DNA from: Macrostomum lignano
Lineage: Eukaryota
Direction of reading: 5' to 3'
Length of the DNA: 44,043 bases
NCBI GenBank assembly: GCA_002269645.1
Contig: NIVC01004499.1
Location: forward strand, 1-44,043
Positions 8,401-44,043 of this stretch are shown piece after piece (position 1 is the first letter of the stretch; the number at the start of each line of letters is the position of its first letter). The position numbers and the translations under genes were made by a program. The notes beneath the pieces are model-generated. The model searched no databases and had not been told where the DNA came from. It worked only from the letters and a program-made list of their open reading frames with translations.

Positions 8401-9900
8401 ATGGCTTCTCTACAATCTGACTTGGCCAATCAAGAAGGCTCTGCCGCCGATTCCTTTGAAGTCGCCGCCGCCGCGTCGAGCGATTGTCGCGTCAAGCTCA
8501 ACCGACGCTCGCTGGGCGGCTTAGCCTTTGATGTTGAATTTATTGACGACAGCGGCCAGAGTAATAAAACTGATAATAGCGATGTTAAAAGTTCAGTTGG
8601 CGGCGGTAAAACGGCTGTTGACGCCAGTCCTAGTCGAAAGGCCCAGCAGCCGCCACAGTCGACTGCAGTCAGCGCCGATGAAATCGCCGAACGCCTGGCC
8701 GCGGCTGAGCTCCGTCGAGAGCAGCAGCTGGCCGAGCGAGTCGGCCGTCTGGAGACCAAGCTCAGTCACGTGACCGAAGTGGCCGAGCGACAGAAACGCG
8801 AAGTGGAAGCTCGAACTGAGCAGAATTTGAAGTCTGTTGAGGAGACGCTGAAAGCTGCCGAAGAGCGCCGACTGGGAAGGATGGAGGCAAGTTAACGGTC
8901 TTGGATAAATGGTTCCATGTGTACTTTTATTTTCTATGCTCGATTGCTTATAACTGCCGCCTGACTGGGGGGGGCAGCGACCCGACTGGGGGGGGGGGGC
9001 AGCGGCCTGATTGTGGTGGGGGGGGCAGCGACCTGATGGTGGTGCGGGGGGCAGCGACCTGATGGTGGTGGGGGGGCAGCGACCTGATGGTGGTGGGGGG
9101 GCAGCGACCTGATGGTGGTGGGGAGGGGCAGCGACCTGATGGTGGTGGGGGGGGCAGCGACCTGATGGTGGTGGGGAGGGGCAGCGACCTGATGGTGGTG
9201 GGGGGGGCAGCGACCTGATGGTGGTAGGCGGGGGACAGCGACCTGATGGTGGTAGGGGGGGGCAGCGACCTGATGATGGTGGTAGGGGGCAGCGACCTGT
9301 TGGTGTGGGGGGGGGCAGCGACCTGATGGTGGTGGGGGGCAGCGACCTGATGGTGGTGGGGGGACAGCGACCTGATGGTGGTGGGGGGGGACAGCGACCT
9401 GATGGTGGTGGGGGGGGACAGCGACCTGATGGTGGTGGGGGGGACAGCGACCTGATGGTGGTAGGGGGGGGACAGCGACCTGATGATGGTGGTAGGGGGG
9501 CAGCGACCTGTTGGTGTGGGGCACTAAGGGGCAGCGGCCTGAAAGCTTGGAAATTGTCAAGTAGACGCGCACCCCGAATGCATTTAATGACACCAGCAAC
9601 GTTATTATCATCAAACCGATGCCCCAACCCAGGAGGTGAAGCAGCGAGCTCGCGGCCTGAGCGCCGGAGCCAAGGAGCGCAGCAAGGCGGTACGCGAGAA
9701 GCTGGAAGCGGAACGGCAGACGCTCGAAGCCGAGCTGGATCGCGACATTCGTGCCAAAGAGGCGAAACGCCGCGAACAAATCGAACGAATTGCAGGGCGC
9801 CCAGCAGCACCTGGCCAAGGTGGAGGGGGTGCGCAATCAGCGGCTGAGCACCGGGCCTGAGCAAGGCTGCGGCGACACGGCCGGAACGCAGTCAGAGTAA
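8401..9900 (+). CDS. Stathmin-family (tubulin-sequestering) protein; exons 8401-8886 and 9633-9900; GC-AG intron; one 1-bp frame repair near 9795-9802
   Basis: RSLGGLAFDV resembles the stathmin KRASGQAFEL cap; ADEIAERLAAAELRR resembles EIQKKLEAAEERRK; the repaired C-terminus HLAKVEGVRNQR resembles KDKHIEEVRKNK. Donor GAG|GCAAGT, acceptor CCCAG|GAG, both phase 0. Probable 5' UTR intron 8241-8361 (GTAAGT..TTTTCAG). Confidence 0.78.
8962..9540. repeat. G-rich minisatellite, about 24-30 bp units (GCAGCGACCTGATGGTGGTG + G-run), in the stathmin intron
   Basis: Direct; G-run length varies between units. Confidence 0.96.
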
Positions 9901-11850: not shown

Positions 11851-14386
11851 ATGCAACTCCAAAGATTCGCGCTCGCGCCCCTAAAGGCCTTGCAATGGAC
11901 CAGTGGCTTCGCTGTCATCGGCAACAGAGGCAGCAGGCGCCTGTGCTCAATAGGAACCATTCTAGGCATTGAGACTAGCTGCGATGACACAGGCGTTGCC
12001 ATGGTAACCACAGACGGTCGGATACTGGCCGAGACTGTCTATGGCCAGACTACTACCCACCTAGCAACTGGAGGCATTGTTCCAGCCACGGCTGCGCAGC
12101 TCCACGCTGCCAATATTAACCCCGCTATTAGCCAGGTGTTACACGAAACTGGCGTTGCCATGGAAACGGTCGACGCGGTCGCCGTTACCAATTGTCCAGG
12201 TATGGCGCCCTGTCTGAAAGTCGGCTTGGTGCACGCTAAGCGCCTGGCTCGGCGGTTTAATAAGCCGCTGATACCTGTGCATCACATGCGAGCTCACGCG
12301 CTCACCGCTTGCCTCACTGATGGGGTGCAGCTGCCCTTCCTAGCCTTGTTGCTAAGCGGCGGCCACTCCCTGCTAGCGGTTGCTAGGGAAGTTGACGATT
12401 TCTACCTGGTTGGCAGAGGTTTGGACCAATCGCCAGGTGACACATTGGACAAGTGCGCTCGGTGAGTTTGGAACTGTGAGAATCGCCCTCAATGTAGCCA
12501 TGAGAATCGCCCTCAACTGTAGTCACGAGAATCGCCCTCGTAGCCATGAGAATCGCCCTCGCTGTAGCCATGAGAATCGCCCTCGCTGTAGCCATGAGAA
12601 TCGCCCTCGCTGTAGCCATGAGAATCGCCATCACTGTAGGCATGAGAAGCACCGTCTCGCTGTAGCTGAGCTGAGAATCGCCCTCTAGCCATGTCGTCGC
12701 CCCAGCTAGCTGAGAATCAGAGTGTCTAAACAGTTCTGAGAGTTGCCCTCACCTGCCATCGCCATTCCCTTCTCGCAGCTACCTGCGTCTCAGTGAGCTG
12801 CCCGGTCTCGGCGATCTGCCCGGAGGTCGCGCCGTCGAGATCGTAGCCTCCCAAGGCGGCGACTCCCGCGCTTGGCCGCTGTCCGGCAGCAGCACCCGGT
12901 TTAACAAGTCCGACTGCAACTTCAGCTTCTCCGGATTGCAGTCTGCGTTTCGACAGCTGGCAAACAGGGTGCTTCTTGGCGACCCCATGCAGCTCTCTGA
13001 GCCGTTGCAGCATAACCATTTGGTAAGTCTCTGTTGTGCTCTGTTCCTGCAATGCCTTATCGACATTGACACTCATTTCAGCTCCATCAAAACTCAATGC
13101 AGTCCCATCGACACTCATTCCAGCTCCATCGACACTCATTCCAGCTCCATCGACACTCATTCCAGCCCCATCGACACTCATTCCAGCCCCATCGACACTC
13201 ATTCCAGTCTCATCGACGCTCATTCCAGCCCCATCGACACTCATTGCAGTCTCATCGACACTCATTCCAGCCCCATCGACACTCATTACAGCCCCATCGA
13301 CACTCATTCCAGTCTCATCGACACTCATTGCAGCCCATTGCATCGATACTCATTCCAGCCCCATCGACACTCATTACAGCCCCATCGACACTCATTCCAG
13401 TCTCATCGACACTCATTACAGCCCCATCGACACTCATTACAGCCCCATCGACGCTCATTCCAGCCCCATCGACACTCATTGCAGTCTCATCGACACTCAT
13501 TCCAGCCCCATCGACACTCATTGCAGTCTCATCGACACTCATTCCAGCCCCATCGACACTCATTCCAGTCTCATCGACACTCATTCCAGTCTCATCGACA
13601 CTCATTGCAGCCCCATCGATACTCATTCCAGCCCCATCGACACTCATTACAGCCCCATCGACACTCATTCCAGTCTCATCGACACTCATTCCAGTCCCAT
13701 CGACACTCATTACAGCCCCATCGACACTCATTCCAGCCCCATCGACACTCATTGCAGTCTCATCGACACTCATTCCAGCCCCATCGACACTCATTGCAGT
13801 CTCATCGACACTCATTCCAGCCCCATCGACACTCATTGGAGTCCTATTAACACTCATTGCAGCTTGTCTAATTACTCGTAATTCGAGTTACTAATTAGCT
13901 AATTCTCTAAGTACGCTCGTACTTCTGTTTCAGGTTCGCCAGCACTACCCTCACCTCTGCGCCAGTCTTCAATACGCCCTGTGTCGAATGGTTGCCACCC
14001 GAACAGCTCGAGCCGTGAAATTCGCTCGCCGCACCGAGCTGCTCCCAGAATCCTTCCCTATCGTTGTCTCTGGCGGAGTGGCCGCCAACTCCGCCGTTCG
14101 TAGTTCGCTTCAAAGCCTCGCCAAGTTTTACGACTTGCCGTCGGCGGTTTTTCCGCCGGCGAGACTCTGCACCGACAATGGCGTCATGATTGCCTGGGCT
14201 GGTGCGCAGCTCTGGCGCCGCCGGCTTCACTGCGTGATGCCAAGGGATTTTGCTAGCGTCGATTTGGAGGCTCGCTGCCCTATTGGGGAAGATTTAACTG
14301 GCCTGGTGGCCAACTGGCACATCCCGGTTGACAGGTTTAGCATTCTGACTGATCATCCAGTAGCTGAGTCTGGGACTGCTCAATAA
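11851..14386 (+). CDS. OSGEPL1: Mitochondrial tRNA N6-adenosine threonylcarbamoyltransferase (Kae1/Qri7/TsaD family); exons 11851-12461, 12779-13022, 13934-14386
   Basis: ILGIETSCDDT, VHHMRAHAL metal-binding motif, LLLSGGHS, CNFSFSGL, VVSGGVAAN, LCTDNGVMIAWAG; Arg-rich presequence-like N-terminus; canonical GT-AG junctions with consistent phases (2, 0); no frameshifts. Confidence 0.96.
12478..12718. repeat. 24-bp minisatellite (GAGAATCGCCCTCGCTGTAGCCAT) in OSGEPL1 intron 1
   Basis: Direct. Confidence 0.95.
13060..13862. repeat. 21-bp minisatellite (ATCGACACTCATTCCAGCCCC) in OSGEPL1 intron 2
   Basis: Direct. Confidence 0.97.
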
Positions 14387-14444: not shown

Positions 14445-14895
14445 GAGCCAGCCTCTCAGATCCTCAGTTGCTGAGCCAGCCTCCCAGATCCTCAGTTGCT
14501 GGGCCAGCCTCCCAGATCCTCAGTTGCTGGGCCAGCCTCCCAGATCCTCAGTTGCTGGGCCAGCCTCCCAGATCCTCAGTTGCTGGGCCAGCCTCCCAGA
14601 TCCTCAGTTGCTGGGCCAGCCTCCCAGATCCTCAGTTGCTGGGCCAGCCTCCTAGATCCTCAGTTGCTGGGCCAGCCTCCCAGATCCTCAGTTGCTGGGC
14701 CAGCCTCCCAGATCTTCAGTTGCTGGGCCAGCCTCCCAGATCCTCAGTTGCTGGGCTAGCCTCCCAGATCCTCAGTTGCTGGGCCAGCCTCCCAGATCCT
14801 CAGTTGCTGTGCCAGCCTCCCAGATCCTCAGTTGCTGTGCCAGCCTCCCAGATCATTCAGTTGCTGTGCCAGCCTCTCAGATCCTCAGTTCTAGG
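14445..14895. repeat. 28-bp minisatellite (AGATCCTCAGTTGCTGGGCCAGCCTCCC) just after the OSGEPL1 stop
   Basis: Direct. Confidence 0.97.
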
Positions 14896-16088
14896 CTAGC
14901 CTCCTGGGCCACTGCCATCCGCTTTGATCCTCAGGCTGGCATGGCAGTTTAAGTTTCCAGCCTAATTTTTCAGCATTATGAGTGTCATTTTCATGGCTAT
15001 ACGCTCGTACGAGCGTATACATGTACTTTAAATGTAGCTAAATTTCTTAAAATGAAAATCATGTACATGTAGAATCAGTTGTAGACATGCCTGTTACATA
15101 CATGTATTTCCATCAGCTTAATAAGTGGCTGCATTTGCCGAGCTGGTTAATTTTGTATTGAAGATATTCTTCGTCACGCATATATAAATCATACAATACG
15201 TGTATACGCGCTTCTCTATTTTTAAAATATATGTAAAAATAAATGAGAAAATATTTTTCTTAACAACCACAACCATTATTATTCTATTCAACTTCATCTC
15301 GTATTAACCATATCGCTCCTTTAAATTTTATTCCCTCCCAACTAGCTGTATGCGAATATGTTAGTTTCTAACGAAAATCCCAATGAACTGCTCCTAACAT
15401 GTTTGTTCCTGTACGTGTACGTGCACATATACATGTATCTGGCATGATCTGTCTGTACGATTTGCAATGCAATAATCTGAATAGATTCAAATGTTAAACG
15501 AAAGCGTGCCTCACATTTATTACAGTGGAAAATGCAATCTTTAATCATTTGATTAATTATGAAATCTCAAATACAGAAACGTGTTTCTGCTTTCAGCAGT
15601 GCATTGCTAGCGTTAAAATTATTACCATTAGTTTTAGTTTAAAAGGCTTAGTAATTTATTTTATTACATTGCCTGTATTAAAAAAATCTACTATACGCCT
15701 AGGCTAAATAGAACAGACAGTTTATAATTTTTGTTAGTATTCTTCGAACATTTTTAAATTATTAGTATTAGTCACAATTTCCACGAACCCGTTCAACCTG
15801 TCGTCGAAAAAATCCATTTTTTTGCTTTACAGAGAAGCTAGTCCTATACGAGTTTATAGTTGGCAATTTGCAATTGTATTAAAAATAATATTTGTCCATT
15901 TTGAAGTTCTTTTTAATTTTAGTTGTTTCATTTCTTGGCTTTAAACATTCATAGGCCTAATATACTATATTAAAGACTTGCAGACTAAGTCTAGTCTAAA
16001 CATAATAAGTTCGAGTAGACTTTAATATACAGACAATTGCTGCATTCGAGGAGTAGTATTGGAATAAAAAGTAATTTTTTTTATAAAA

Positions 16089-21096: not shown

Positions 21097-21356
21097 GTGA
21101 GCTGCGTTTTGTTTCAATTTGCTTTTGTAAATTGCTCTCATTAGCGTTTTTAATGGGACCACAAGAGTAAAAATTGTAAATAGTCCTACAACTTTATTAG
21201 TTTTTGTTTTATTGCTAGTTAATTTCTGGACTGCATTTTAGGTTGAAACTATTGGTTAAATCCCTGTTCCTTGAGAACTACTTCAGTTCCATGCTTTAGT
21301 TGAGTTGCTAGCTGCCGAATAAGCTTATGTGTAATGTCGGGACCTGTCTGTTCTAG

Positions 21357-21422
21357 TGTCTGTCTGTCTGTCTGTCTTTAATCACTGTTTGTCTGTCTGT
21401 CTGTCTGCCTGTCTGTCTGTCC

Positions 21423-21462
<40 letters not shown>

Positions 21463-21518
21463 TTCTACCTGTCTGTCTGTCTGTCTGTCCGTCTGTCTTT
21501 CTGCCTGTCTGTCTGTCC

Positions 21519-21558
<40 letters not shown>

Positions 21559-21816
21559 TTCTACCTGTCTGTCTGTCTGTCTGTCCGTCTGTCTGTCTGT
21601 CTGTCTTTCTTCCTGTCTGTCTGTCTGTCTTTCTTATCTGTCTGTCTTTCTTCCTGTCTGTCTGTCTGTCTGTCTCTCTGTCTGCCTGTCTGTCCGTCTG
21701 TCTGTCTGTCTGTCTTTCTTCCTGTCTGTCTGTCTGTCTGTCTTTCTTATCTGTCTGTCTTTCTTCCTGTCTGTCTGTCTGTCTGTCTCTGTCTGTCTAT
21801 CTGCCTGCCTGCCTGC

Positions 21817-21850
<34 letters not shown>

Positions 21851-21855
21851 GTCTA
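21357..21855. repeat. Imperfect (CTGT)n microsatellite
   Basis: Direct; intronic if the upstream septin exons are real. Confidence 0.97.
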
Positions 21856-22072
21856 TAACTTACTCAGCTAGTTAACCATTGGTTGCCGCAACCAACTGCC
21901 TGGCCCAACGCTAGCCCAATAATACAGAGCTGCGGTGACAAATACAATTAAATTAAATTAGCAAATGGTCTTGAAACAAAAAATAATAAATTGCGTTGCC
22001 TTTTATTAGTTAGATTACACATTCTGCAGCTACCAGAAATACTCGCAGTTTTTTTCTGTTTCGTTTAAAAAA

Positions 22073-25000
22073 ATGGACTCTGGCACACCCGACGCTCCGC
22101 CTTCCCCCACCTTATCCTCATCCACCTCTTCATCATCTCAGTCCAATGGCGCAGCCGCCTCGGCCGACTCCACCGGCAGCGACAACAGCCGGGTACAGCT
22201 GGGCTTTGCCAACCTGCCCGACCAGATGCACCGCAAAGCGGTTAAGAAGGGCTTCAATTTCACCTTGATGGTGGTTGGCGAGAGCGGACTGGGCAAGAGC
22301 ACCCTTATTAACAGCCTGTTCCAGCAGGACCTGTACAAGGACCGCGAACTGGGCAGCGTCACCGAGCGGATTAACAAGACAACCGAGATTGAGAAGCGCT
22401 ACATTGAATTGGACGAGAAAGGCGTCAAACTTCGCCTGACTGTGGTTGACACGCCTGGGTTTAACGACTGCATCAACTGCCAGGAGTGCTGGAGACCGAT
22501 CGAGGACTATATTGATAACACCTTTGAGCAGTACTTTAAAGATGAGTGCGGTCTCAATAGGAAGAATATCATTGACCACCGGGTGCACTGCTGCTTGTAC
22601 TTTATTAGTCCGTATGGCCACGGACTGAGGCCCATTGATGTGGAGTTTATGCGAAGGCTGCATGGCAAGGTGAGTGAGTCTGTCTGCTGGCTGGTGTCTG
22701 CTGCCTACCACTGTTGCTCTAAAATCATGTATAGTCATCTATGTCTTCCCCTTTTAACTTCCCTGCTTTCTTCTCCTCTCATCTCCCTTCATCTTTCTCT
22801 CTATCCTCTCCTCTCTCCTTTTCCTCTCCTCTCTCCCTTTCCTCTCCTCTCTCCCTTTCCTCTCTCCTCCCTCTCCTCTCTCCTCTCCCTCTCCTTCTCC
22901 CTCTCCTCTCTCCTCTCCCTCTCCTCTCCCTCTCCTCTCCTCTCCTCTCTCCCTCTCCTCTCCCTCTTCTCTCCTCTCTCATCTCCTCTCCTCTCTCCAT
23001 CCACCCTCTACTCTCCCTCTCCTCTCTCCCTCTCCTCTCTCCTCTCCCTCTCCTCTCCACTCTCCTCTCCTCTCCTCTCTCCTCTCTCCTCTCCTCTCTC
23101 CTCTCCCTCTCCTTCTCCCTCTCCTCTCTCCTCTCCCTCTCCTCTCCCTCTCCTCTCCTCTCCTTCTCCCTCTCCTCTCCCTCTTCTCTCCTCTCTCCTC
23201 TCCTCTCCTCTCTCCATCCACCCTCTACTCTCCCTCTCCTCTCTCCCTCTCCTCTCTCCTCTCCCTCTCCTCTCCACTCTCCTCTCCTCTCCTCTCTCCT
23301 CTCTCCTCTCCTCTCTCCCTCCACCCTCCACTCTCCTCTCCCTCTCCTCTCTCCCTTCATCTTTCTCTCTCTCCTCTCCTCTCTCCCTTTCCTCTCCTCT
23401 CTCCCTTTCCTCTCCTCTCTCCCTTTCCTCTCTCCTTCTCCCTCTCCTCTCTCCTCTCCCTCTTCTCTCCTCTCTCCTCTCCTCTCCTCTCTCCCTCCAC
23501 CCTCTACTCTCCCTCTCCTCTCTCCTCTCCTCTCCTCTCTCCCTCCACTCTCCACTCTCCTCTCCTCTCCTCTCTCCTCTCTCCTCTCCTCTCTCCCTCC
23601 ACCCTCCACTCTCCTCTCCCTCTCCTCTCTCCCTTCATCTTTCTCTCTCTCCTCTCCTCTCTCCCTTTCCTCTCTCCTTCTCCCTCTCCTCTCTCCTCTC
23701 CCTCTTCTCTCTCCACTCTCCTCTCCTCTCTCCCTCCACCCTCCACTCTCCTCTCCCTCTCCTCTCTCCCCCTATTATCGTTTCTTCTTTCGTCTTCCTC
23801 TCTCCCCTCTTCTCTCCTCTCCCTCTCCTCTCCTCTCTCCCTCCACCCTCTATCTCTCCTCTCCCTCTCCTCTCTTCTCTCTCTTCCTCTTCTCTCCCCT
23901 CTCCCCCCTCTGTTTCCCCCTCTCTCTCCTCCCCTGTCTCTTTCCATTTCTCCCCCTCTCAATTTCTACTCCTCTCTATTGAAGAATGCGGTGAGTATAG
24001 CAAAAATACATAATTGATCGTTCGGCATGCACAACCAGGTAGACTGTTTGTCTGAAAAAGAAACTGACTGCCTGTTATTCAATTTAATTCGTGTTTTTTC
24101 ATCAAGTGCGCAAATCTGTGCACTTGAAATTTAAAGCCAATTGAAATTAGAACACTGTTTTTTTTCTTTAAAAAAATAATTCCAAGTACCTTTTACGGTC
24201 CTGACCGCCATTTTTTAAACATCTGAAATTTCAATGCAAACTGAATGCTTGCTTGTAGTGCGCAATTGTTCTACTTGAAATACCGATTTTTCAAAATATT
24301 TTGTTTTAACAATTACCTCTGTTCGTGCTAAGCGCTTGCTTATCTGTGCACTGAATTGAATCTGTCATCTTCTGTAATGGTTTTACTTTCTATTTTCTCA
24401 TATATTTCCCATCAGCGATCTTTTATTCCCATCTGGGATCTCGCATTCCCCTCTTAGGATATTGTATTCTCCACCTGGGATCTTGTATTCTCTACCTGGG
24501 ACCTTGTATTCCCCACATGGAATCTTATGTTCTACATCTGGAATCTTGTATTCCCCATCTGGGATCTTGTATTCCCCACCTGGGATCTTGTATTCCCTAC
24601 CTGGGATCTTGTATTCCCCACCTGGGATCTTGTATTCCCCACCTGGGATCTTGTATTCCCTACCTGGGATCTTGTATTCCCTACCTGGGATCTTGTATTC
24701 CCCACCTGGGATCTTGTATTCCCCACCTGGAATCTAATGTTCTACATCTGGAATCTTGTATTCCCTACCTGGGATCTTGTATTCCCCACCTGGGATCTTG
24801 TATTCCCCACATGGAATCTAATGTTCTACATCTGGAATCTTGTATTCCCCATCTGGAATCTTGTATTCCCCACGTGGGATCTTGTATTCCCTACCTGGGA
24901 TCTTGTATTCCCCACCTGGGATCTTGTATTCCCCATCTGGAATCTTGTATTCCCCATCTGGGATCTTGTATTCCCCTCATGGGATCTTGTATTCCCCACA

Positions 25001-25698
25001 TAGGATCTTGTATTCCCCACATGGGATCTTGTATTCCCAACCTGGAATCTTGTATTCCCCATCTGGGATCTTGTATTCCCCATCTGGGATCTTGTATTCC
25101 CCTCATGGGATCTTGTATTCCCCACCTGGGATCTTGTATTCTCCACCTGGGATCTTAGATTTTCCATTAGGAATTTTGATTTTGGAAGCATGATTTCTTA
25201 TTTATCCCCATTCGGAATTACGAGTACATGTACATAGTAATGCACGTGTCCGCACCGATTGACCCCGCCTCAGGTGAACATTGTGCCCATTATCGCCAAG
25301 TCGGACACGCTCACTTCAACCGAAGTTCGCGAACTCAAAGAACGAGTTATGGGAGACCTGGAACGGCACAAGATTCAAATCTATCGAATGCCGGAGACTG
25401 ACTCGGACGATGATGAAGAGACTCGCGTTCAGGAGTCTGAGATCCGGGCCTGCATCCCGTTCGCGGCCATCGGCAGCAACTGCGTTGTCGAGTCTGGCGA
25501 AACCGGGCGTCGTGTTCGGGGCCGGCAGTACCCGTGGGGCGTTGTTGAGGTGGAGAATCCACGGCACTGCGACTTCACTAAGCTGAGGATCTTCCTGCTG
25601 GGCACTCATATGCAGGATTTGAAGGATATTACTAAGGAGGTGGGGTGTTTGTTATTTTTGTTTGTTTAGTTAGCTATCCAGTTAGTCAGTCAGTTGGT

Positions 25699-26276: not shown

Positions 26277-27493
26277 GTTAGCTAGTTAGTTAGTTAGTCA
26301 GTTAGTTAGTTGTTAGCTAGTTAGTCAGTTAGTTAGTTGTTAGCTAGTTAGTCAGTTAGTTAGTTAGTTAGTTAGTTGTTTGTTTGTCAGTATTTTATTT
26401 AGCGTGTCACTATATTGAAACACCATCAGAAGACCCCAACAATGTGCTGTTTTGTCCGCAGTTGCACTACGAAAATTACCGGGCCAAGTACATTACAGAG
26501 CGAATGACTAAGCGCAAGGGACCGCGCGAAGAGATGGAGACTAGAAAGTGAGTGTGCATGGCTTCTCTTTTAAAGTTCTGGCTGTACTTACTAGACTCTC
26601 ACGTGGAATAATTTTTTAATATCTTATTTTCCAGATCGAAGAACACCTCCGATGCTCAGTTTGAGGCGCTGGTGGACACCGAAGGCCTTCTCAAGGAGAA
26701 AGAGGACGAGGTGAGGGTGGCGGATACTGAGAAAATGAGATAATAATCATGAGATGGGAGAATGGACACTTAATATGAGACAACAGACACGATAAGATGG
26801 GAGAATAGACACGATAAGATGGGAGAATAGACATGATAAGATGAAAGAATAGACACGATAAGATGGGAGAATAGACATGATAAGATGGGGAGAATAGACA
26901 CGATAAGATGGGGAGAATAGACACGATAAGATGGGAGAATAGACATGATAAGATGGGGAGAATAGACACTATGAGATAAGAGAATAGACACGATAAGATG
27001 GGAGAATAGACATGATAAGATGGGGAGAATAGACACTATGAGATAAGAGAATAGACATGATAAGATGGGAGAATAGACACGATGATATGGGAGAATAGAC
27101 ACGATGAGATGGGAGAATGGACACGATGAGATGGGAGAATAGACACCTGATATTTGTGCTGTCATACATAAAAGACAAGAGATTAGTAAAAGATCTCCCT
27201 AAGTCTCTAACACCGCCACAACCCGCCGCCAATCTCAGATCCGCCGCATGCAGCAGTTGCTGCAGCATCTGCAGTCCAACAAGTCGTCTCAGGGTGGCTC
27301 AGCTGACGGCTCCGGGCCGCCAACTTCGTCAGCCGCCGCCGCTGTGACATCAGCCAACTCCGCTGGCGGCGCTGCGGCCGTCTCGACGACTGCCGCCACA
27401 TCGTCAGGCGGGCCAACTGGCAATTCGTCTGGCGGAACAGCTGGAACGGCTGTCGGCGGTGCCGGGGCGACCAATGGACAGGAGGCAGCCTAA
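22073..27493 (+). CDS. Septin, SEPT2 group (SEPT1/2/4/5-like); exons 22073(or 22142)-22669, 25274-25639, 26462-26547, 26635-26710, 27239-27493
   Basis: Polybasic HRKAVKKG, G1 GESGLGKS, G3 DTPG, G4 AKSD, septin unique element [26 protein letters not shown], and coiled coil LLKEKEDE|IRRMQ typical of the SEPT2 group; all junctions GT-AG with consistent phase; no frameshifts. Confidence 0.96.
22742..23978. repeat. About 1.2-kb polypyrimidine (CTCT/CTCCT) low-complexity tract
   Basis: Direct; nearly purine-free on the + strand. Confidence 0.97.
24415..25158. repeat. 21-bp minisatellite (CTGGGATCTTGTATTCCCCAC) in a septin intron
   Basis: Direct. Confidence 0.97.
25668..26388. repeat. (GTTA)n / (GTCA)n microsatellite in a septin intron
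   Basis: Direct. Confidence 0.97.
26735..27146. repeat. About 22-bp minisatellite (GATGGGAGAATAGACACGATAA) in the last septin intron
   Basis: Direct. Confidence 0.96.
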
Positions 27494-30591: not shown

Positions 30592-33500
30592 TCAGCTGGC
30601 TTCAGAGTCCCCAGTCGGCGCGGCGGTCTCTTTAGGCATCTCCAGTCGCCACAGGCCGTAATTCTCTCCGATCTTGTGCTGCCACAATCGCAGGGTGCCA
30701 TCCTCGCTGCCTGAGGCATACAAGTGACCGTCTGGCGAGTAACGGACGCAGTGCACAGGTCCGAAGTGACCCTTGTGCGACTCCACCACCGAGCCGTCCT
30801 CAGCTGAGCACTTGTACAGCACGAAGTCTTCGCCGCCGCAGACAAAGACAGGCTCGCTAGGGTGCAGAGCTGCTGAGTAGATCTGACAGGGTAGACTGTG
30901 GCTGCTCAGCTCCACCAGTCTGTCCGAGTCCCAGATTGACACCTGGATAATGGGGCATAACAGTTCTGCTGTTAATGTGTCTGACTTAAAGATCGTGCGG
31001 ATTTTTTAAAGGCCGATTTCCTGGAAAAATCATTGAATTGCATTCGATCTGGGGCAGTGAAGATTGCTACTCTGTTGTATTTTATATAGTTGTGCAGTGA
31101 AAGTTTCAATTTTATTTTCATATCAGAAGGAGCAAATTCAATCATTGATTTTTTCCTATCTCCGCAGTATTTTTCCAGGAAATATGCCTCCAAAAAGTCA
31201 TTGGCCATGTGTCCGAAAAAAAACTTTGAGTCCTTAACTTACAACCCGCCAATTTTTGTCTACTAATCGATTATATTGAGCGACAGATGCAAAATACAGT
31301 AAAACAGTTCGTTTTATTTATTATAAACAAGCACTTTTGTCCAGCATAAGAAGATGGTGAAAGATTTGGCCTGTAGTTCTTCGACCAGATTTCACTGCAT
31401 CACAAATGACATTTCTAAGGAAAGTGGGATAATGCATGATATTCAATGGGACACGCTACGTGCATCCATTAAAACCTTTGATTTAACAGAGCTAGAAAGC
31501 TAGGGGTTGAACTCTAGGTGAACAGGGGTAGAAAGCTAGGTAAACATGGGTAGAACTCTGGGTAAACAGGGGTAGAACTCTGGGTAAACAGGGGTAGAAC
31601 GCTACAGTAACAGGCACAAACCTGTGAGCCGCAGCATAGCAACAGCCGAGAATCATCTAATCGCAATTGCAAGTCGCTGGGACAGCCAGACAGCTCCCGA
31701 TCCAGCACCGCGCTCTCCCCATCTGAGCAGCGAACATCTCGAACTACAAATCGTTTATCATCTGCCGCACTGGCAACCAGATATTGATTGAGAAAGATTG
31801 CCGCGCGAAGACTCTTGGCATGGCCCGGCAGTTCAATAGGTGGTGAATCATAATTAGACAAATCGAACAGTCTTAGAAGGCGTTCATTGCTACCAGTGAG
31901 CAATCGACCGCATTGAGCATCAAAATCAACGCATTTGACAATGTGCTTGTGCTCAAAACTGTGCAAAGGGTCGCCAGTGAATCCGTCCCATAATTTGGCT
32001 GAGAAGTCTGCAGCTCCAGTTGCTACCTGACTTGAGTCTGAGTTTAGCACAGCAGACCAGACTGCACCTTTGTGCCCACTCAGGGTGCCAATCCAATCGC
32101 CTGTATCGCCTTGGAGCAGCTGACTCTGGCCATCTGGTGTGAGATTATCAAATAATTAATTTGTGCAAGTGTGACATCATCATTTATTTTGTTTGACATA
32201 TTTTTAAATCACTATTCATTAATTGCCACTATGAGTAGGATAGTTTGAACATAAAAGTGACTATGCATTTGGGTGACTTGGCATATTTAATTATATGTTT
32301 TATATAAGGCCCTTAATTATTATCAACAGTTAAAATTATCAGTACATAAATAAAGCATAATCTAGCCTCACTAAGTCATTAAATTATATATGCAATTGTC
32401 AACTGACCTAGCTGATCTAGTTCTAGTAAAATAATGGTAGACTAAAAATAAGACTTTTGGTCTTTAGATAACTTTCCTAACAAAAAATTAATGACAAATC
32501 AAATACTTTTAGTCAGTTTGCCAATAGATTGCTAAACTAAATCATATTTAGTAAAAACTAAGTTGCATGATCAATGTAATTTTAGAGGTTGTATATAGGC
32601 TTAATGTCATGATATATATCAAAGTGATAGGGAGGGGGTAGAGGATGTATCCTTCAAATGGCCTAAAAGTTTTGTTGAAGTCTGCTCTTTAGCTTATATA
32701 ATGTAGATGTCCATTGTGAAAATAATTTATCCTCCTGAATATAACTATTCTCCCTGAAAAAAATTTCTAGCTATATGCCTAATATATATATACTTTTAAT
32801 TTTGATATTTAGTGGATCTTATTTAAATAAAAGACCTAAAAATTACAAAACTACAAACAAACAAAATTACTATTCTATTTTTAGGCTAAACCCCTAGGCT
32901 TAAACTTAGCAACATTGAAAAATTGTGACTATGCACCAATCCATATTGCGGATTGTGTCCCTATTGCAGCTAATGGCCATTTTCGTGGACGGCGTCCGGC
33001 GCGGATTGGACTGGTGGCGGCGCGGCGTGCGGCGGCGGCGCGGCGCGTGGCGGCGGCGCGCGGTGGCGTGGTGTGTGGCGGCAGCGCGCAGCGCGCGGCG
33101 AGCCATTGACTGACTAATTGAACCAAATCACTGATCCTGGGGACTGGCCCTGGCGCAGTACGGGTAGATGTCTGGCGCGGGAAAGGGGGGCGTCCGGCGC
33201 GGTTCAGACCTTGGCTGCAATAGGGGATTGTGTTACATGTACGCCAGAAAGTATTTGGCTATCTAGTAAATTGTACACCAATAAAAATTGTGTGATTAAA
33301 GAGCACATACCAATGCAACAAGTGGTAGATGCATGCAACAAAAAATTGCTCCAAAAAAATGATACCAATATTATTTAAAAATGGATATTATTAGTAAAAC
33401 AAAAAAGTTATGTATACTAAAGTTTTAGATATATTTTTACTAGTAATTGTAAAAACTTTAAGTATAATATTTAAAAAATTAATTTATTGCCACAAATTTA

Positions 33501-36402: not shown

Positions 36403-37296
36403 ATGTCATCGCAGCTGAAAACCCGACAGTCAAGGACATCGTCAGCTTCAAGCAGCGATTCCGAACTGCAGATTTCCAGCTGGCTTCATTTGCAACAGAA
36501 CCAGTCAAATCAAACGCAGAAATCTTCTAAAGGACTACCACAAAAGCAACAGAAATCTAGCAGCATGCCTAAGAAAGTGCCACAGAAGCAGATAAACTTT
36601 GCAAAGCCAAGCCAGAAATTGCCTCAGAAGAAGCAACAAATCCCTTCAAAGAAACTATCAGATCAGCAGCAGACAACGCAGCATTGGCGACCGGCCTGGC
36701 GAGAGCCAACTTTACGGAACTACAGCATGGACCGTCGAAATTCCGTTGAAAGTAAGACCGTCGAAAGTAAGACCGTCGAAAGTAAGACCGTCGAAAGTAA
36801 GACCGTCGAAAGTAAGACCGTCGAAAGTAAGACCGTCGTAAGTAAGGCCGTCGAAAGCACCGTCCCTGACCCGGCCCCAAATCAGCGCCCAAAAAAGCGT
36901 CAACTTCAGACTCAGAGCCAGCAGCAGCATCAGCAGGATCAGGAAAATGAAGTAATCGACAGTGTACTCTCCAATCAACGTCGCTTCAATCGTTACTCGA
37001 CTGAAATCGCCCAGATGTCCCGCTGCCTGCAGCCGATGCGCGATGCCGTCATTGACTGGGAAAAGTTTCGCAGCAACCTGCTTGAACAGAACGAGCAGTG
37101 TAACGCTGTCAGCATTCGACTGATTCGGACGGAAGCCTCTGCTCAGGAGCTTCAGCAGAGCCTCGCTGACATTCGAGCCCTGCTGGAAATGGAATTGGAG
37201 AAACTGACCGTACAGGAGTTGCAACGGTTGCTGCAGGAGAAGCAGAAGCGCCGCGCTCAGGACAAAGGACATAAGCCGGCTCATTATATTGATTAG
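36403..37296 (+). CDS. Uncharacterised 297-aa protein: S/Q/K-rich N-terminus, 7 x SKTVE-type repeats, C-terminal predicted coiled coil
   Basis: Intact 894-bp GC-richer ORF, coding-like composition, Leu/Glu/Gln heptad pattern in the C-terminal third; no family recognised. Confidence 0.65.
   Translation: MSSQLKTRQSRTSSASSSDSELQISSWLHLQQNQSNQTQKSSKGLPQKQQKSSSMPKKVPQKQINFAKPSQKLPQKKQQIPSKKLSDQQQTTQHWRPAWREPTLRNYSMDRRNSVESKTVESKTVESKTVESKTVESKTVESKTVVSKAVESTVPDPAPNQRPKKRQLQTQSQQQHQQDQENEVIDSVLSNQRRFNRYSTEIAQMSRCLQPMRDAVIDWEKFRSNLLEQNEQCNAVSIRLIRTEASAQELQQSLADIRALLEMELEKLTVQELQRLLQEKQKRRAQDKGHKPAHYID
36751..36855 (+). repeat. In-frame 15-bp coding repeat (AGTAAGACCGTCGAA), 7 units
   Basis: Direct. 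Confidence 0.95.
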
Positions 37297-39813: not shown

Positions 39814-42800
39814 ATGGCTGACCCCAGCTCTCAGAGCCACAGGTGGAACCTGACGATTCTAACCGGGCCGATCTCGCATTCTTCTCGAATGGAGAGCGCG
39901 AAGTTGAGTCGAGAAATCAACAGCAAACCGATCCTAAAGAGGACACAGATAACTCTAATAATCAATCAGCAACGACGGTGCTGTCAGAAGATGACCGGCA
40001 CCAACTGATTAAACTGACAAAAGCAGGCAAGTTTGAAGAGGCAAAACAAGTTATATCTCACTTACAAGACAAATTTATGCCTATTATTCCGGAGCGCGAA
40101 TCCCTCCGAACAGCGACGCACTATGCAGCAATGAGCGAGGAGGGAGCCGCGCTGTTGCAGGATTTGAAAGCCCTGGACGGTGCCAGCTGCTTGTCGAGAG
40201 CCGACCGTAAAGGCACTACGTCGCTCCATTTGGCGGCGCAGTTTTTATCGAAGGAGACTTGGCTGAGAACTATAAAACCGCTGGTAACGGCTAGTGATTT
40301 AAGGAAAAAAGACGATAAGTGGGACACCTGCGCTCACATCGCGGCTCGCGACAACTCCGTGGACGATGGAGTCATTCTCGAGATAGTTGACGCCCTCGGA
40401 GACAGATGCCTGGAGGTCCTGAATCGGAAGGGCGAGACGCCGCTGCAGCTGGCAATGAAGCACTGCGGTCCGGAATCAGCAGAGGCTCTGTTGCAAAAGT
40501 TTGATCTGAAGGTGCTTCAAGACACAACAGATGACGAGGGCAACACACTAGCCCACTTTGCGGCAAAAAATCCGAAGGACACTTTGTTAGTTTTTGATAA
40601 TCGATGGCGCAAATTAAGCGGAGATCCGAATCCTGATTCAGATTCAGATTCGTGTCTTTACTGGACAAACAACAACGGCGAGACTGTTCTGCAAATTGCG
40701 CTTGAGTGCTGCTCGGTTCCAACTGCTCAAAAGCTTCTGCAGAGAGCCGCTAAATCGGAAGCAATTCAGCAGAGAGATTCGGCTGGAAACACCTGTCTGC
40801 ATATCGCAGCAATGTCCAGTGGGCGGCAGAACTCCTGCTTACAGCAGTAAAACTTCATAAGCCGCTGGGTCCCGAATGCCTCGCTTGGAAAAATCAGGCT
40901 GGCGATTCGTGCTGCACGTCTCACTGGAAAATTGCCCTCAAGATGATAAAGCACTTACGAAACTCTTAGCTAAACTAATATCGAAATCTACTAAGGATAT
41001 TTTGTCGCAAACTGATGCGGCTGGCAACAGCTGCCTGCACATTGCTGCCAGAAGAAGCGACAAGTTGGCCCTGTTGTCTAAGGCTAAGAAAGTGTGCGGC
41101 AAGAGCTACGTCTACTGGCAGAACAGCCGACTCCAGTCGGTTCTGTTCTTTGCAATCGGCGTTGTCTCCGCGAAGCAATTGAAAGCTGCGGTGCACCAAA
41201 GCAGCCTCAAAGATGTATTCGGTAACACGGCACTTCACTATTTGCTTCAAGGCTACGGAACTGAAACCAACGGGCTCAGTTTGCTGGATTCTGTCAGCGA
41301 CATCCTTGATAAAATCAAGGTCTGATTGGCATGGGCATTGAGCCAAAAGAAGAGAATAAAATGGGACAGAACTTCCTGCATTGGGCTCAGCTTGAGACCG
41401 ATGTGCTCAGGGAGCTTCTAAAAGCGTTCGCGACCAACAAAACGTTTGATTTTAGATACCTTTTTAAGCAAGTAGAGTTCGGATCAAATGGGCTTCACTT
41501 AGTTCACACTTACTCAAGAAAGTACAACTTAGAGGAGTTAATCCAGCCAATAGCAAAGCTTTCAGGTATGAAAGAAAACGAACTGTTAAGCCTGACAGTT
41601 TCAAAAGGAGCCAACAAAGACGCCACTTGTTTGCACTTTGCCTGTGAGGGTGGAAAAAAAAGTAACGTTCAATACTTGCTCGAGAAAGAACAGAAGCTCA
41701 AGAAGTTTACAGAATCCGGCATGTCCTGCATCGACTTTGCCATTGACAGAGGCTGGCTAAAAGAAATTTGGGCCATCTATGTGGAATACGAGACTACAAG
41801 AACCGCAACAAGCGATTTTAAATCGGCAGTCAACACCGCCAGAATAAAGCTATTGCGCCTCATCGATCCGGCGCGAAGAGCTCTCAGACTTCCAGATCGA
41901 GTGACAGCCCAGAGGAACCTGGCATCCATTTTAGACCATTACTTCGCTCAGAAGTCGGAGGAACCCACGTTTTCTAGTAAAGATCGAGGCCTGCACATTC
42001 TGGAGCGAGCTATAGAGCTAAACTCGACCAAGATTTATCGCAGCGCTTTAAGAATGAACTTTGTTCACGCAGTCACTGAGACTCGACTACCAGCATTTCT
42101 GTTTCAGAGAAAGAACTCACCAAGTGCGATAGGAATTTCCCGGCAGGGAGAAAGTTCTGGACCATATAAATTGATCCAGGCTTCCTCTGAAATGTCTGTA
42201 ATCGACATAGTCTCATTATACTATAGTCATTATGACGAAATCCTACCCGACTTGATTCTCACTCGACAGTTCGAACTGATTCCGGCTAGCATTGGTCTTC
42301 TTATTCTGCTGGGTCCAGAAATTGAGAAGCTGCGCTCCGAGGCCCGTGGAAAACATGCTCGGCTGCAGGAGCTGCACACGAGGGTGCTCAACATCGCCGT
42401 GAATGCACTCGATGAGTTGTTTGCTAGCCAGTAAAACTGAAAAAACGTTGCTATTTGATTACCTTCAGGGTCAGATTGTTGGCGATGACGGTGCTCTGGG
42501 TCCAAAGTTTCCTTTCAGAAACTTCGACAAAGAAATCAGATACGGCTCAGTGCTAAAAATGATCGAAGAAGCGGACTGCAACGAGTTATTTGCCACAGAC
42601 TGCATCTACAGCTTTGTGCAGGAGGAGTGGAAGAGGGGACGGAGACCATGCCAATGTTGCACAGACTCTAATGACTCAACCAATGCCACTAAAATGGTCA
42701 AAGTCAGTGAAAATCAGCAGACGCCTAGCTCAGATGAAAGCAATTACCAACAACAGAATGGTGCTGCGGTGCCCAGTGACAAAGCAAGCGCTCAAAGCTC

Positions 42801-44043
42801 CTGCTGGGGCAAATTTAACTCTCCTAAAGCGAAGTTTATTGGCCATTACACATCATTCTCTTTTCTGATGGTATACTTTATCTGGTATACGGTGGACTTT
42901 AAGCAAAGTTTTTCCACTGCTTATCAGACATTCCAATTGTTCTTTATTTCTTGTCCTTTTTGCTTCAAGAAATCGCCGACATCTACAGAAGGAGGAAGCG
43001 ACGTCAATACTTTGTTTGTGACTCCATTCTACGATTGCCGAGGTACTTCAAAGACGTGCTGAACTTTCTCGACTGGTTCGCCATGATTTTTGTTTTCGTT
43101 GGCCTTATTTTAAAGTGGATTCTTCTCGCCGAGTCGCGCAAGCTGCACGATGCCTATCCCTGCCAAGTGGTCTTTAGTGTTGCATTCGGTCTGCTGATGT
43201 TTCGGTCGGTGCACTTCCTTAGCCTATCGGCCGTTATTGGTCCCGTGGTTGCGATGCTCTGGAGCCTCCTGTTTAACGACTTAGTGCCTTTTTTGGCTAT
43301 CATCGGAGTCATCATCGGCGCTTTCGGAGTATTTTTCTTCAATTTGCTGTTCTCGATCACAGGAGTGGACACTCGATCAGCTTACTACAACAGCTCGTGG
43401 TACGGCTGGATACATTTGTGCCAAGCGATCACTCTGCCATTCAATATTTTGTTCACCAACTTCGACAAGGTTATCTTTGACAAGTCCTCTAACGAACATT
43501 ACTATTGAAAGGTGGCCCACAGTCAAGGAATCGGGGTGTTTGAGAACCTGATGATGTTCTTGTTCATGGGACTCGTCAACATTGTAATGTTTGAACCTGC
43601 TGATTGCTTTGTTTAACCTTCGAGTCAGCCGCATGGCCAACGAAGCTCTGGGATTTGGAGAAAGACTTACTTTGGCATGTTGCGCGAGTACCAGGGCCTG
43701 AGTCCGTGGCCACGCCGCTATCGTTCATCTGGTTCATCTACGATTTTGTTCGGGTTCTTGCAAGTGTCGGAAGGGTCGAAAGTTCGTAAGAGTTACTCAG
43801 GAGGTAGGTGGTCGTTGCATTTTTAGTGTTTAAGGAGTATTCTTGTATATAATAAAAAAGTGAATTTCGCGGGATTTTTACAGAAAGCGCACTGGTGGCA
43901 AGACGAAAGTAAATATTCGAGAACTACATGAAGTTTCTAGAGTTCCAGGCCAATCAATTTACGTCGAATTCGACCTCGCCCTTCTGTTGTCCAACTTTGG
44001 TTCGAACAACCAGCAGGACGAACTGGCCGAGCTCACCGAGGCC
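39814..44043 (+). CDS. Ankyrin-repeat TRP cation channel with TRPM-like membrane domain; more than 1350 aa after repair; 10 or more 1-bp frame breaks; one intron 43804-43883; truncated by the window end
   Basis: About 15 ankyrin motifs (GTTSLHLAA, GETPLQLAM, GNTCLHIAA, GNSCLHIAA, DATCLHFAC and others), pre-S1 LFATDCIYSFVQEEW, S1 SPKAKFIGHYTSF, S3 NFLDWFAM, S4-S5 IGPVVAML..DLVPFL, repaired S6 LVNIVMLNLLIALFN and TRP box WRKTYFGMLREYQGLSPWPTPL. Functional gene versus pseudogene is unresolved. Confidence 0.85.

What the first reader, a model, noticed from the sequence alone, without database searches (positions are those of the whole stretch)
39814..44043. TRP channel joining a TRPA-length ankyrin array to a TRPM-type membrane domain
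About 15 ankyrin repeats resemble TRPA1 in number, but the rest looks like TRPM: helical linker IAVNALDELF..GSVLKMIEEADCNELFATDCIYSFVQEEW, S6 VNIVMLNLLIALFN, and a TRP box W-x9-EY-x6-P-x-P with the same spacing as TRPM2 (WKFQRHDLIEEYHGRPAAPPP). TRPC has one more residue in this segment, and TRPA1 has no canonical box. Canonical TRPMs have MHR domains and no ankyrins, TRPC has about 4 and TRPN about 29. This may be a lineage-specific domain-swapped TRP class. If the host is a flatworm that matters, because a flatworm TRPM is the praziquantel target.
Basis: partly seen in the sequence, partly recalled or inferred. Interest (0 to 1): 0.78.

Follow-up and report, generated by a model that had tools for sequence, protein, structure and literature searches.

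The report
Flatworm ankyrin-TRPM hybrid ion channel gene
This is a real gene from a Macrostomum-like flatworm for an ion channel that joins about 15 ankyrin repeats to a TRPM-type pore; the family appears flatworm-only and undescribed, and the broken reading frames look like assembly errors.

Summary
Window 39843-44043 (+) is one nearly intronless coding stretch of at least 1,365 codons. It encodes about 15 ankyrin repeats, a helical linker, S1-S6, a TRP helix (W-x9-EY-x6-PPP) and the start of a C-terminal helix, and it runs off the window end.

The reading frame is broken by 16 single-base indels and no stop codon. A database protein (P0028) matches the last 850 bases codon for codon, with 1 mismatch, 11 indels and one 80-nt GT-AG intron. 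The breaks are therefore most likely assembly errors that grow denser towards the window end, not decay.

The membrane half is TRPM-type. The best 60 solved-structure matches of a family profile are all TRPM (E down to 1e-32). The 50 listed Foldseek matches of a paralogue model are all TRPM as well. The TRPM Ca2+-site residues are conserved. The SLOG/MHR1-2 domain is absent and ankyrin repeats stand in its place; an MHR3/4-like linker is retained.

Every named relative is from a flatworm: many Macrostomum lignano paralogues, plus trematodes, cestodes and a monogenean. I found no paper describing this architecture; TRPM and TRPS are reported as ankyrin-free.

Placement relative to TRPM and TRPS is unresolved, because no outgroup sequences were available.

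The parts
39814..39842 (+). Uncertain translation start region. The ATG at 39814 is in frame +1 relative to the ORF. An AG lies at 39841-39842, directly before the ORF.
   Evidence: The orthologue P0020 starts MEPDSS, which aligns to window GTG GAA CCT GAC at 39843. The start is therefore either a further indel after the 39814 ATG, or an A>G difference or error at 39843, or an AUG supplied by a spliced leader. None of these is resolved.
39843..40106 (+). N-terminal non-repeat region (residues 1-88), acidic and polar.
   Evidence: Translation. It aligns to P0020 from residue 1.
40107..41792 (+). Ankyrin-repeat array of about 15 repeats, holding one-base deletions at about 40828, 40908 and 41321.
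   Evidence: Pfam Ank families. 10 repeats by iterated HMM. About 15 helix pairs in the orthologue model, pLDDT 83.6. Foldseek best matches are ankyrin-1, AnkB, NompC and Drosophila TRPA1 solenoids.
41793..42819 (+). Helical linker between the ankyrin array and S1. It contains LPDLILTRQFELIP (42243-42284), IAVNALDELF (42393-42422), GPKFP (42499-), the pre-S1 motif EEADCNELFATDCIYSFVQEEW (42565-42630) and a low-complexity insert (42631-42819). There is a one-base insertion at 42432.
   Evidence: hhalign: the window's group versus the other flatworm groups gives probability 95% (E 4e-8). Those groups versus the TRPM pre-S1 region (MHR3/4) give 99.4% (E 1e-21). The direct comparison reaches only 40%. 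PDB profile matches start at the pre-S1 motif.
42820..43229 (+). S1-S4 voltage-sensor-like domain, with a one-base deletion at about 42914. It carries the TRPM Ca2+-site residues: S2 E (in LLQEIAD), S2 D in place of Q, and S3 N and D (in VLNFLD).
   Evidence: Alignments to TRPM2. Column conservation across the family. Coordinates.
43236..43647 (+). S4-S5 linker, S5, pore helix and filter (QAITLPFNILFTNFD, 43422-43466), and S6 (GLVNIVM|LNLLIALFN, 43566-43632). Indels lie at 43410, 43421, 43488, 43507 and 43590.
   Evidence: Frameshift-aware alignment to P0028. TRPM alignments. Helix layout from the paralogue model.
43650..43750 (+). TRP helix and TRP box 2: GIWRKTYFGMLREYQGLSPWP(P)PLSFIWFIYDFV. 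Deletions lie at 43648 and 43713.
   Evidence: The spacing W-x9-EY-x6-PPP equals that of the TRPM2 sequence aligned.
43753..43803 (+). Post-TRP segment GSCKCRKGRKFVRVTQE, preceded by a deletion at 43751.
   Evidence: Exact match to P0028.
43804..43883 (+). The only intron detected: 80 nt, GTAGGT...TTTTTACAG.
   Evidence: P0028 skips exactly this stretch. Splice-site sequence read.
43884..44043 (+). C-terminal 'rib' helix (KAHWWQDESKY-PENYMKFLEFQANQLRRIRPR) and the start of the terminal helix (LLLSNFGSNNQQDELAELTEA). Indels lie at 43917, 43958 and 43980. The gene is cut by the window end about 20 codons before its stop.
   Evidence: P0028 continues TGAQLADNYKKLVKERRRTI and then stops. Paralogue P0004 models rib and pole helices here.

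Best explanation
The locus is a real, probably intact, nearly intronless gene of a Macrostomum-like flatworm that is not M. lignano itself. It encodes one subunit of about 1,395 residues of a tetrameric cation channel.

The domain order is:
- a short N-terminus;
- about 15 ankyrin repeats;
- a helical linker related to TRPM MHR3/4;
- a TRPM-type S1-S4 domain;
- the pore (filter F-T-N-F-D and S6 VNIVMLNLLIALFN);
- a TRP helix;
- rib and terminal helices.

Shown here:
- The 16 frame breaks are one-base indels without any nonsense codon, and they grow denser towards the window end.
- An intact protein in public data matches the last 250 codons almost perfectly.
- The membrane half is closest to TRPM in both sequence and predicted fold.
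- The SLOG/MHR1-2 domain is missing and ankyrin repeats take its place.
- Every relative that carried an organism name is from a flatworm, and the family is greatly expanded in Macrostomum.

Inferred, not shown:
- The frame breaks are assembly errors.
- The protein forms a non-selective cation channel.
- Gating is helped by intracellular Ca2+, because the Ca2+-coordinating residues known from TRPM2, TRPM4, TRPM5 and TRPM8 (S2 Glu, S2 Gln changed to Asp/Glu, S3 Asn and Asp, TRP-helix Glu) are conserved.
- It cannot be gated by ADP-ribose through MHR1/2 or NUDT9H, because both are absent.
- The ankyrin solenoid is the input module, acting by protein or cytoskeleton tethering or by ligand, thermal or mechanical coupling, and passes its signal through the MHR3/4-like linker to the TRP helix.
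- The most economical history is that a flatworm-stem TRPM lost MHR1/2 and gained an ankyrin array.
For: Continuity and frames:
- 18 exact-frame segments join into 1,365 codons with no stop.
- Alignment to P0028 gives 250 matched codons, 1 mismatch, 11 one-base indels and one GT-AG intron.
- Alignment to P0020 gives 5 more indels and no stop on the path.
- The indels are not tied to long homopolymers.
- Exons of other genes in the window are intact.

TRPM-type membrane domain:
- The paralogue model (pLDDT 82.8) shows S1-S6, a long S6-TRP helix, and rib and pole helices.

Ca2+ site:
- In the window's group the S2 Glu is kept in 22 of 24 sequences, S3 Asn in 23 of 24, S3 Asp in 22 of 24 and the TRP-helix Glu in 19 of 24.

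No MHR1/2:
- There is no Pfam LSDAT/SLOG hit, and no phmmer hit with a lamprey TRPM2 N-terminus, in any ankyrin-bearing member.

Linker homology:
-. In addition, PF25508 (TRPM2-like domain) is found in the ankyrin-bearing P0044.

Single gene:
- Colinear full-length homologues exist.
- The paralogue gene P0007 spans 2,999 nt for 963 aa, so a near-intronless structure is typical of the family.

Distribution:
- M. lignano, Opisthorchis, Dicrocoelium, Fasciolopsis, Paragonimus, Echinostoma, Heterobilharzia, Schistocephalus, Hymenolepis and Protopolystoma.
Against: - The source of P0028 is unknown, and no encoding contig is on record. It could come from an intact paralogue or allele while this copy is broken.
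- The TRP gene has 5 indels in its first 3.3 kb, whereas about 1 kb of septin exons has none. The error rate is therefore not uniform, and paralogue collapse or a very young pseudogene is not excluded.
- The position that aligns to the orthologue's ATG is GTG.
- The direct profile match of the window's group to TRPM MHR3/4 is weak (40%). The link rests on intermediate sequences.
- The neighbour-joining tree has no outgroup, and it supports a single ankyrin-bearing clade in only 49 of 100 bootstraps.
- No functional data exist. Ca2+ dependence, ion selectivity and the role of the ankyrin array are inferences from conserved residues and from other TRP families.
- Pfam Ion_trans does not score on the window's own membrane domain.
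Confidence: 0.78

Rival explanations
1. This copy is a pseudogene: a dead duplicate in a large, fast-turning-over gene family. P0028 would then come from a live, near-identical sister copy.
For: There are 16 frameshifts in 4.2 kb, while neighbouring genes' exons are intact. GTG stands at the orthologue's start position. The family has dozens of paralogues, so copies turn over.
Against: There are no nonsense codons, and only 1 amino-acid difference in 250 codons alongside 11 indels. Neutral decay should give several times more substitutions than indels. The indels pile up towards the window end, at about 1 per 70 nt in the last 850 nt against about 1 per 670 nt before it. That pattern fits falling read depth at a contig end.
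Confidence: 0.1
2. This is an ancient, separate group-1 TRP lineage that never lost its ankyrin repeats. It would be sister to TRPM+TRPS, not a TRPM that gained ankyrin repeats secondarily.
For: All other group-1 TRP families carry ankyrin repeats, and TRPM/TRPS are inferred to have lost them (PMC7306681). The PDB profile scores are about equal for all TRPM subtypes, TRPM2, 3, 1, 5, 4, 8 and 7, from 1e-32 to 1e-19, as expected for a deep branch. The ankyrin-bearing groups lie together on one side of the unrooted tree.
Against: The family was found only in flatworms among named hits, so an ancient origin requires loss in every other phylum. The linker is homologous to TRPM MHR3/4, and one member hits Pfam's TRPM2-like domain. 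Both fit descent from a TRPM with a melastatin region. The long branches may simply reflect fast evolution.
Confidence: 0.12
3. The ankyrin part and the channel part are two adjacent genes or separate transcripts, joined only by reading through.
For: Many M. lignano database models of this family are fragments holding only one half (P0001-P0003, P0008).
Against: There is no stop codon and no gap between the halves. The conserved linker bridges them. Full-length colinear models exist in M. lignano (P0014, NCBI), and ankyrin plus Ion_trans proteins exist in Dicrocoelium, Heterobilharzia and Schistocephalus. The paralogue model packs the ankyrin repeats, linker and membrane domain as one chain.
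Confidence: 0.04
4. It is a divergent TRPA or TRPN channel whose membrane domain only looks like TRPM.
For: The repeat number is TRPA-like. The first ankyrin segment's best PDB hit is NompC (3e-17). NompC and Drosophila TRPA1 are among the structural matches of the ankyrin array.
Against: No TRPA1 or NompC match below E=1 for the membrane half, while TRPM reaches 1e-32. The other ankyrin segments hit only generic or designed ankyrin proteins, so the NompC hit is not specific.
Confidence: 0.03

Closest known systems
TRPM channels (TRPM2, TRPM3, TRPM4 and TRPM8 as solved examples)
   Same: S1-S6 and TRP-helix sequence. TRP spacing W-x9-EY-x6-PPP. S6 motif N-x4-L-N-L-L-I-A-x-F-N. The Ca2+-site residues in S2, S3 and the TRP helix. 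An MHR3/4-like pre-S1 linker. Rib and pole helices after the TRP helix. The overall predicted fold.
   Different: There is no MHR1/2 (SLOG) domain and no NUDT9H or kinase domain. About 15 ankyrin repeats stand at the N-terminus. TRP box 1 reads WRKTY, not WKFQR. The filter reads F-T-N, not F-G-Q/E. The generic Ion_trans model does not score.
TRPS (soromelastatin, CED-11-like)
   Same: It is a sister family of TRPM with a related membrane domain, so it is a candidate neighbour in any tree.
   Different: TRPS is described with SLOG and Nudix domains and without ankyrin repeats (PMC7306681). No labelled TRPS sequence was available to compare here.
TRPA1 and TRPN (NompC)
   Same: A long N-terminal ankyrin solenoid in front of a six-helix TRP channel. 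The repeat number is near that of TRPA1 (14-18).
   Different: The membrane domain is not similar at the sequence level. NompC has 29 repeats. The linker between the array and S1 is TRPM-like, not TRPA- or TRPN-like.
Flatworm TRPM_PZQ (the praziquantel target)
   Same: Same phylum and the same broad TRPM-type membrane domain, with a conserved glutamate in the TRP helix.
   Different: TRPM_PZQ has MHR and NUDT9H domains and its own M. lignano orthologue (PMC9910428). The present family is a separate paralogous group. Praziquantel sensitivity is untested.

Membership tests
TRPM | S1-S6 plus TRP domain closer to TRPM than to any other TRP family | tested here: met
   all top sequence, profile and fold matches are TRPM. 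The best non-TRPM PDB sequence hits are E 0.03-0.08.
TRPM | N-terminal melastatin homology regions 1/2 (SLOG / LSDAT_euk) | tested here: not met
   No Pfam hit. No phmmer hit with a lamprey TRPM2 N-terminus in any ankyrin-bearing member. Ankyrin repeats occupy this position.
TRPM | MHR3/4-type helical linker before S1 | tested here: inconclusive
   hhalign gives a direct match of only 40%. Through the other flatworm ankyrin groups it gives 95% and 99.4%. PF25508 is present in P0044.
TRPM | TRP box 1 and proline-rich TRP box 2 with TRPM spacing | tested here: met
   IWRKTYFGMLREYQGLSPWPPPLSF after repair. The spacing equals that of TRPM2. Box 1 is WRKTY rather than WKFQR.
TRPM | C-terminal rib helix and coiled-coil pole helix | tested here: inconclusive
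   Both are modelled in paralogue P0004 and aligned weakly to TRPM2. In the window the region is cut at 44043, and P0028 shows only about 40 further residues.
TRPM (Ca2+-activated subset) | Ca2+-coordinating residues in S2, S3 and the TRP helix | tested here: met
   E, D (in place of Q), N, D and E in the window, conserved in 19-23 of 24 group members. Which residues bind Ca2+ is taken from my knowledge of published TRPM2, TRPM4 and TRPM8 structures.
TRPS | SLOG N-terminus, Nudix C-terminus, TRPS-type TRP box 2 | tested here: not met
   No SLOG or Nudix hit. The TRPS consensus for box 2 was not available to compare.
TRPA | 14-18 ankyrin repeats plus a TRPA-type membrane domain | tested here: not met
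   The repeat number fits. The membrane domain gives no TRPA1 match below E=1.
TRPN | About 29 ankyrin repeats plus a NompC-type membrane domain | tested here: not met
   About 15 repeats. No NompC match for the membrane half. The NompC hit of one ankyrin segment was not reproduced by the others.
TRPC | About 4 ankyrin repeats, TRP_2 domain, EWKFAR box | tested here: not met
   No TRP_2 Pfam hit. No TRPC PDB hit below E=1. The box reads IWRKTY.

The most novel reading that the evidence does not exclude
The flatworm ankyrin-TRPM proteins are a distinct metazoan group-1 TRP family that branches beside TRPM and TRPS. They would preserve the ankyrin-bearing state that existed before the SLOG domain was fused on. 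That would make them a living intermediate that rewrites the 'ankyrin-free TRPM-TRPS ancestor' model. They would also offer a flatworm-only channel class, present in flukes and tapeworms, as a possible drug target.
Probability: 0.12. Interest if true: 0.8.

Novelty: new variant of a known kind. Interest (0 to 1): 0.6.

Why it matters
TRPM and its sister family TRPS are described as the only group-1 TRP channels without ankyrin repeats (PMC7306681; PMC12980990). Here a TRPM-type channel carries a long ankyrin solenoid in place of the nucleotide-binding SLOG domain.

The family is found across free-living and parasitic flatworms and has expanded to dozens of copies in Macrostomum. It is a natural experiment in swapping the sensor module of a TRP channel while keeping the linker, the Ca2+ site and the pore.

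I found it only in flatworms, so host animals may lack it, and it occurs in flukes, tapeworms and a monogenean. It is therefore a candidate parasite-selective channel class, alongside TRPM_PZQ.

The sequences already sit in databases as 'hypothetical protein' or as the automatic name 'TRPM7'. What is new is recognising and defining the family, not raw sequence data.

Tried and rejected
- Pfam on the membrane pieces alone, and on the repaired C-terminal 599 aa, gave no family.
- The first word-indexed homologue search found only 8 proteins and missed the 94%-identical P0028. The exhaustive representative search was needed.
- Looking up the contig that encodes P0028 found nothing on record, so its source (transcript or gene model) is unknown.
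I modelled the paralogue P0004 and a substring of the orthologue P0020 instead.
- Neighbour-joining bootstraps did not settle whether all ankyrin-bearing groups form one clade: 49 of 100 with the fragment P0059 included, 10 of 100 without it. No TRPA, TRPC, TRPN, TRPV or labelled TRPS sequences could be obtained for rooting.
- I rejected a specific TRPN origin for the ankyrin array. It was suggested by the NompC top hit, but the other ankyrin segments hit only generic ankyrin proteins.
- I rejected the apparent in-frame TGA at 43506. It is two compensating frameshifts.
- The automatic alignment of the pore-loop columns was unreliable (filter rows). The filter assignment rests on the pairwise alignment and on the model.
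- Searches of the TRPM and flatworm TRP literature found no description of ankyrin-bearing TRPM-like channels. [quoted passage not shown]
Full report
**What is in the sequence**

From 39843 to the window end (44043), the + strand carries one long coding stretch. It switches reading frame repeatedly but never loses sequence between the pieces.

A frameshift-aware alignment to the M. lignano orthologue P0020 places five one-base indels, at about 40828, 40908, 41321, 42432 and 42914. P0020 is 54% identical and colinear from its residue 1. No stop codon lies on the alignment path.

A second alignment, to the 276-aa database protein P0028, covers 43197-44043. It shows:
- 250 matched codons with one amino-acid mismatch;
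- eleven one-base indels, at 43410, 43421, 43488, 43507, 43590, 43648, 43713, 43751, 43917, 43958 and 43980;
- one 80-nt GT-AG intron, at 43804-43883.

Joining the 18 exact-frame segments gives 1,365 codons without a stop. P0028 runs 20 residues beyond the window before its stop, so the gene is cut at its 3' end.

**Are the frame breaks real?**

The pattern argues for consensus errors in a long-read assembly, not for decay:
- there are 16 indels, no nonsense codon and essentially no substitutions relative to an intact public protein;
- indel density rises from about 1 per 670 nt to about 1 per 70 nt in the last 850 nt;
- the indels are not tied to long homopolymers.

Exons of the other genes in the window are uninterrupted: septin, a TsaD/OSGEPL-like gene, a WD40 protein and a stathmin-like ORF. 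This means the problem is local to the window end. It also leaves a small chance that this copy is a young pseudogene or a collapsed paralogue.

The source of P0028 could not be traced. P0028 omits the intron exactly, so it derives from a spliced transcript or from a gene model on an intact copy.

**Host**

The septin exon at 22073-22672 is 90% identical to M. lignano septin. The next best hits, from vertebrates, are about 70%. The closest relatives of the TRP gene are all M. lignano proteins, at 34-61% identity. The window therefore comes from a macrostomid flatworm other than M. lignano.

**Domain anatomy**

- Pfam finds ankyrin families in all three N-terminal pieces. An iterated ankyrin HMM finds 10 repeats, and spacing suggests 15 over residues 88-650.
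- An AlphaFold model of the orthologue's N-terminal 824 residues (pLDDT 83.6) shows about 15 helix-pair repeats, followed by a helical domain. Its best structural matches are the long solenoids of ankyrin-1, AnkB, NompC, latrotoxin and Drosophila TRPA1.
- After the array comes a conserved helical linker holding LPDLILTRQFELIP, IAVNALDELF, GPKFP and the pre-S1 motif EEADCNELFATDCIYSFVQEEW.
- Then follow S1-S6, a TRP helix and a rib helix (coordinates).

**Family assignment of the channel half**

- The C-terminal 660 residues hit Nematostella TRPM2-like at 4e-15 and other TRPMs below that. Nothing from TRPA, TRPC or TRPN appears below E=1.
- A four-sequence family profile raises TRPM2 to 1e-32. 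The 60 best PDB sequences are all TRPM, and the matches run from the pre-S1 motif through the post-TRP helices.
- An AlphaFold model of paralogue P0004 (pLDDT 82.8, pTM 0.70) has the TRPM helix layout. All 50 listed Foldseek matches are TRPM3, TRPM7, TRPM2 or TRPM4, at E about 1e-13.
- After repair, S6 reads VNIVMLNLLIALFN. The TRP region reads IWRKTYFGMLREYQGLSPWPPPLSF, which is W-x9-EY-x6-PPP as in TRPM2.
- The residues that coordinate Ca2+ in TRPM2, TRPM4, TRPM5 and TRPM8 (by my knowledge of those structures) are present in the window and in 19-23 of 24 members of its group.

**What replaced what**

No ankyrin-bearing member has a SLOG/MHR1-2 match.

Profile-profile comparison of the 480 residues before S1 gives three results:
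- 99.4% probability (E 1e-21, 240 columns) between the two more conservative flatworm ankyrin groups and TRPM MHR3/4;
- 95% (E 4e-8) between the window's group and those two groups;
- 40% for the direct comparison of the window's group with TRPM.

One M. lignano member (P0044) combines ankyrin repeats, Pfam's TRPM2-like domain and Ion_trans.

The architecture is therefore ankyrin array, then an MHR3/4-like linker, then the TRPM membrane domain. Only the distal melastatin module was exchanged.

**Distribution**

An exhaustive profile search of 1.84 billion representative proteins found 1,121 relatives and 44 below 1e-30.

Every ankyrin-bearing hit that carried a name is from a flatworm:
- many M. 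lignano clusters;
- trematodes: Opisthorchis, Dicrocoelium, Fasciolopsis, Paragonimus, Echinostoma and the schistosomatid Heterobilharzia;
- cestodes: Schistocephalus and Hymenolepis;
- the monogenean Protopolystoma.

A few members from unnamed assemblies could not be assigned to a taxon.

In a neighbour-joining tree of S1-TRP, three ankyrin groups each get 100% bootstrap. They are the window's Macrostomum-rich group, a second Macrostomum group, and a neodermatan group. Their union gets only 49%, and the tree has no outgroup.

The paralogue P0007 occupies 2,999 nt for 963 residues in the M. lignano genome. Near-intronless genes are therefore normal for this family and are not a sign of retroposition.

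**Literature**

Himmel et al. 2020 state that ankyrin repeats were not detected in TRPM or TRPS, and they infer an ankyrin-free ancestor. A 2026 TRPM domain-evolution paper held none of the flatworm terms I searched for (Macrostomum, platyhelminth, flatworm, Schistosoma, Schmidtea). The schistosome and planarian TRP papers I checked simply count these genes as TRPM, or do not mention ankyrin-bearing forms at all. A 2026 mollusc survey repeats that group-1 TRPs except TRPM carry ankyrin repeats. Only a passing remark on 'fewer ankyrin repeat domains' in TRPM diagrams was found.

**Likely working**

This section is inference. The protein should assemble as a tetramer, possibly with paralogues, into a cation channel. 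The conserved Ca2+ site suggests that intracellular Ca2+ is a co-agonist, as it is in TRPM2, TRPM4, TRPM5 and TRPM8. ADP-ribose gating is ruled out because the domains it needs are absent.

The ankyrin solenoid is the most plausible input module. It sits where MHR1/2 would be, on top of the retained MHR3/4-like ring that contacts the TRP helix. The large expansion in a free-living worm points to a sensory role.

**Verdict**

The case is a new variant of a known kind: a TRPM-type channel with an ankyrin array, specific to flatworms as far as I could see, and not described in the papers I could search.

Three questions remain open: the rooted phylogenetic position, the true state of this particular copy, and all aspects of function.

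Noticed in passing
window 39841-39845: The codon that aligns to the M. lignano orthologue's start ATG is GTG, directly after an AG. The nearest upstream ATG (39814) is one base out of frame. Possible causes are a further assembly error, a real start shift, or a spliced-leader AUG. The last idea comes from my memory of flatworm spliced leaders ending in AUG and was not tested.
   Followed up: partly
window 4752-5474, 8593-9864, 12726-13894, 14468-14899, 21356-21871, 22741-24013, 24517-25158, 26770-27165: There are long tandem or low-complexity repeat tracts. They show as repetitive ORF translations on both strands and as strong GC-skew swings, for example -0.63 at 22001-24000. Several lie inside introns of the septin and TsaD-like genes.
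   Followed up: no
window 11851-12465 and 13988-14386 (+): Two exons of a TsaD/OSGEPL-type tRNA threonylcarbamoyltransferase gene (Pfam PF00814). They are separated by about 1.5 kb of tandem repeats.
   Followed up: partly
window 22073-22672, 25259-25669, 26459-26545 (+): A septin gene with intact exons, 84-90% identical to M. lignano septin. I used it to place the host as a Macrostomum relative that is not M. lignano.
   Followed up: yes
window 8401-8895 (+); 31514-32050 (-); 36403-37296 (+): Three further ORFs: a stathmin-family ORF, a WD40-repeat exon on the minus strand, and a 297-aa ORF with ESKTV repeats and no Pfam match.
   Followed up: partly
proteins P0084 and P0153: Two TRPM-like proteins score both for ankyrin repeats and for the melastatin region. 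In P0084 the ankyrin hit (95-182) lies N-terminal to an MHR match (214-798). I did not check whether these are real architectures, fused gene models, or hits to the ankyrin-like MHR3.
   Followed up: no
proteins P0066, P0085, P0093, P0097, P0102, P0105, P0111, P0130: A well-separated clade of 1,200-1,400-aa TRPM-like proteins. The five looked up come from ENA metagenome assemblies. They show neither ankyrin nor melastatin N-terminal matches, and their taxon and family (possibly TRPS-like) are unknown.
   Followed up: no
window 39843-40826 versus PDB: The first seven ankyrin repeats hit NompC's array (3e-17) clearly better than ankyrin-B (2e-10). Later repeats do not, so I judged the hit non-specific.
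   Followed up: yes
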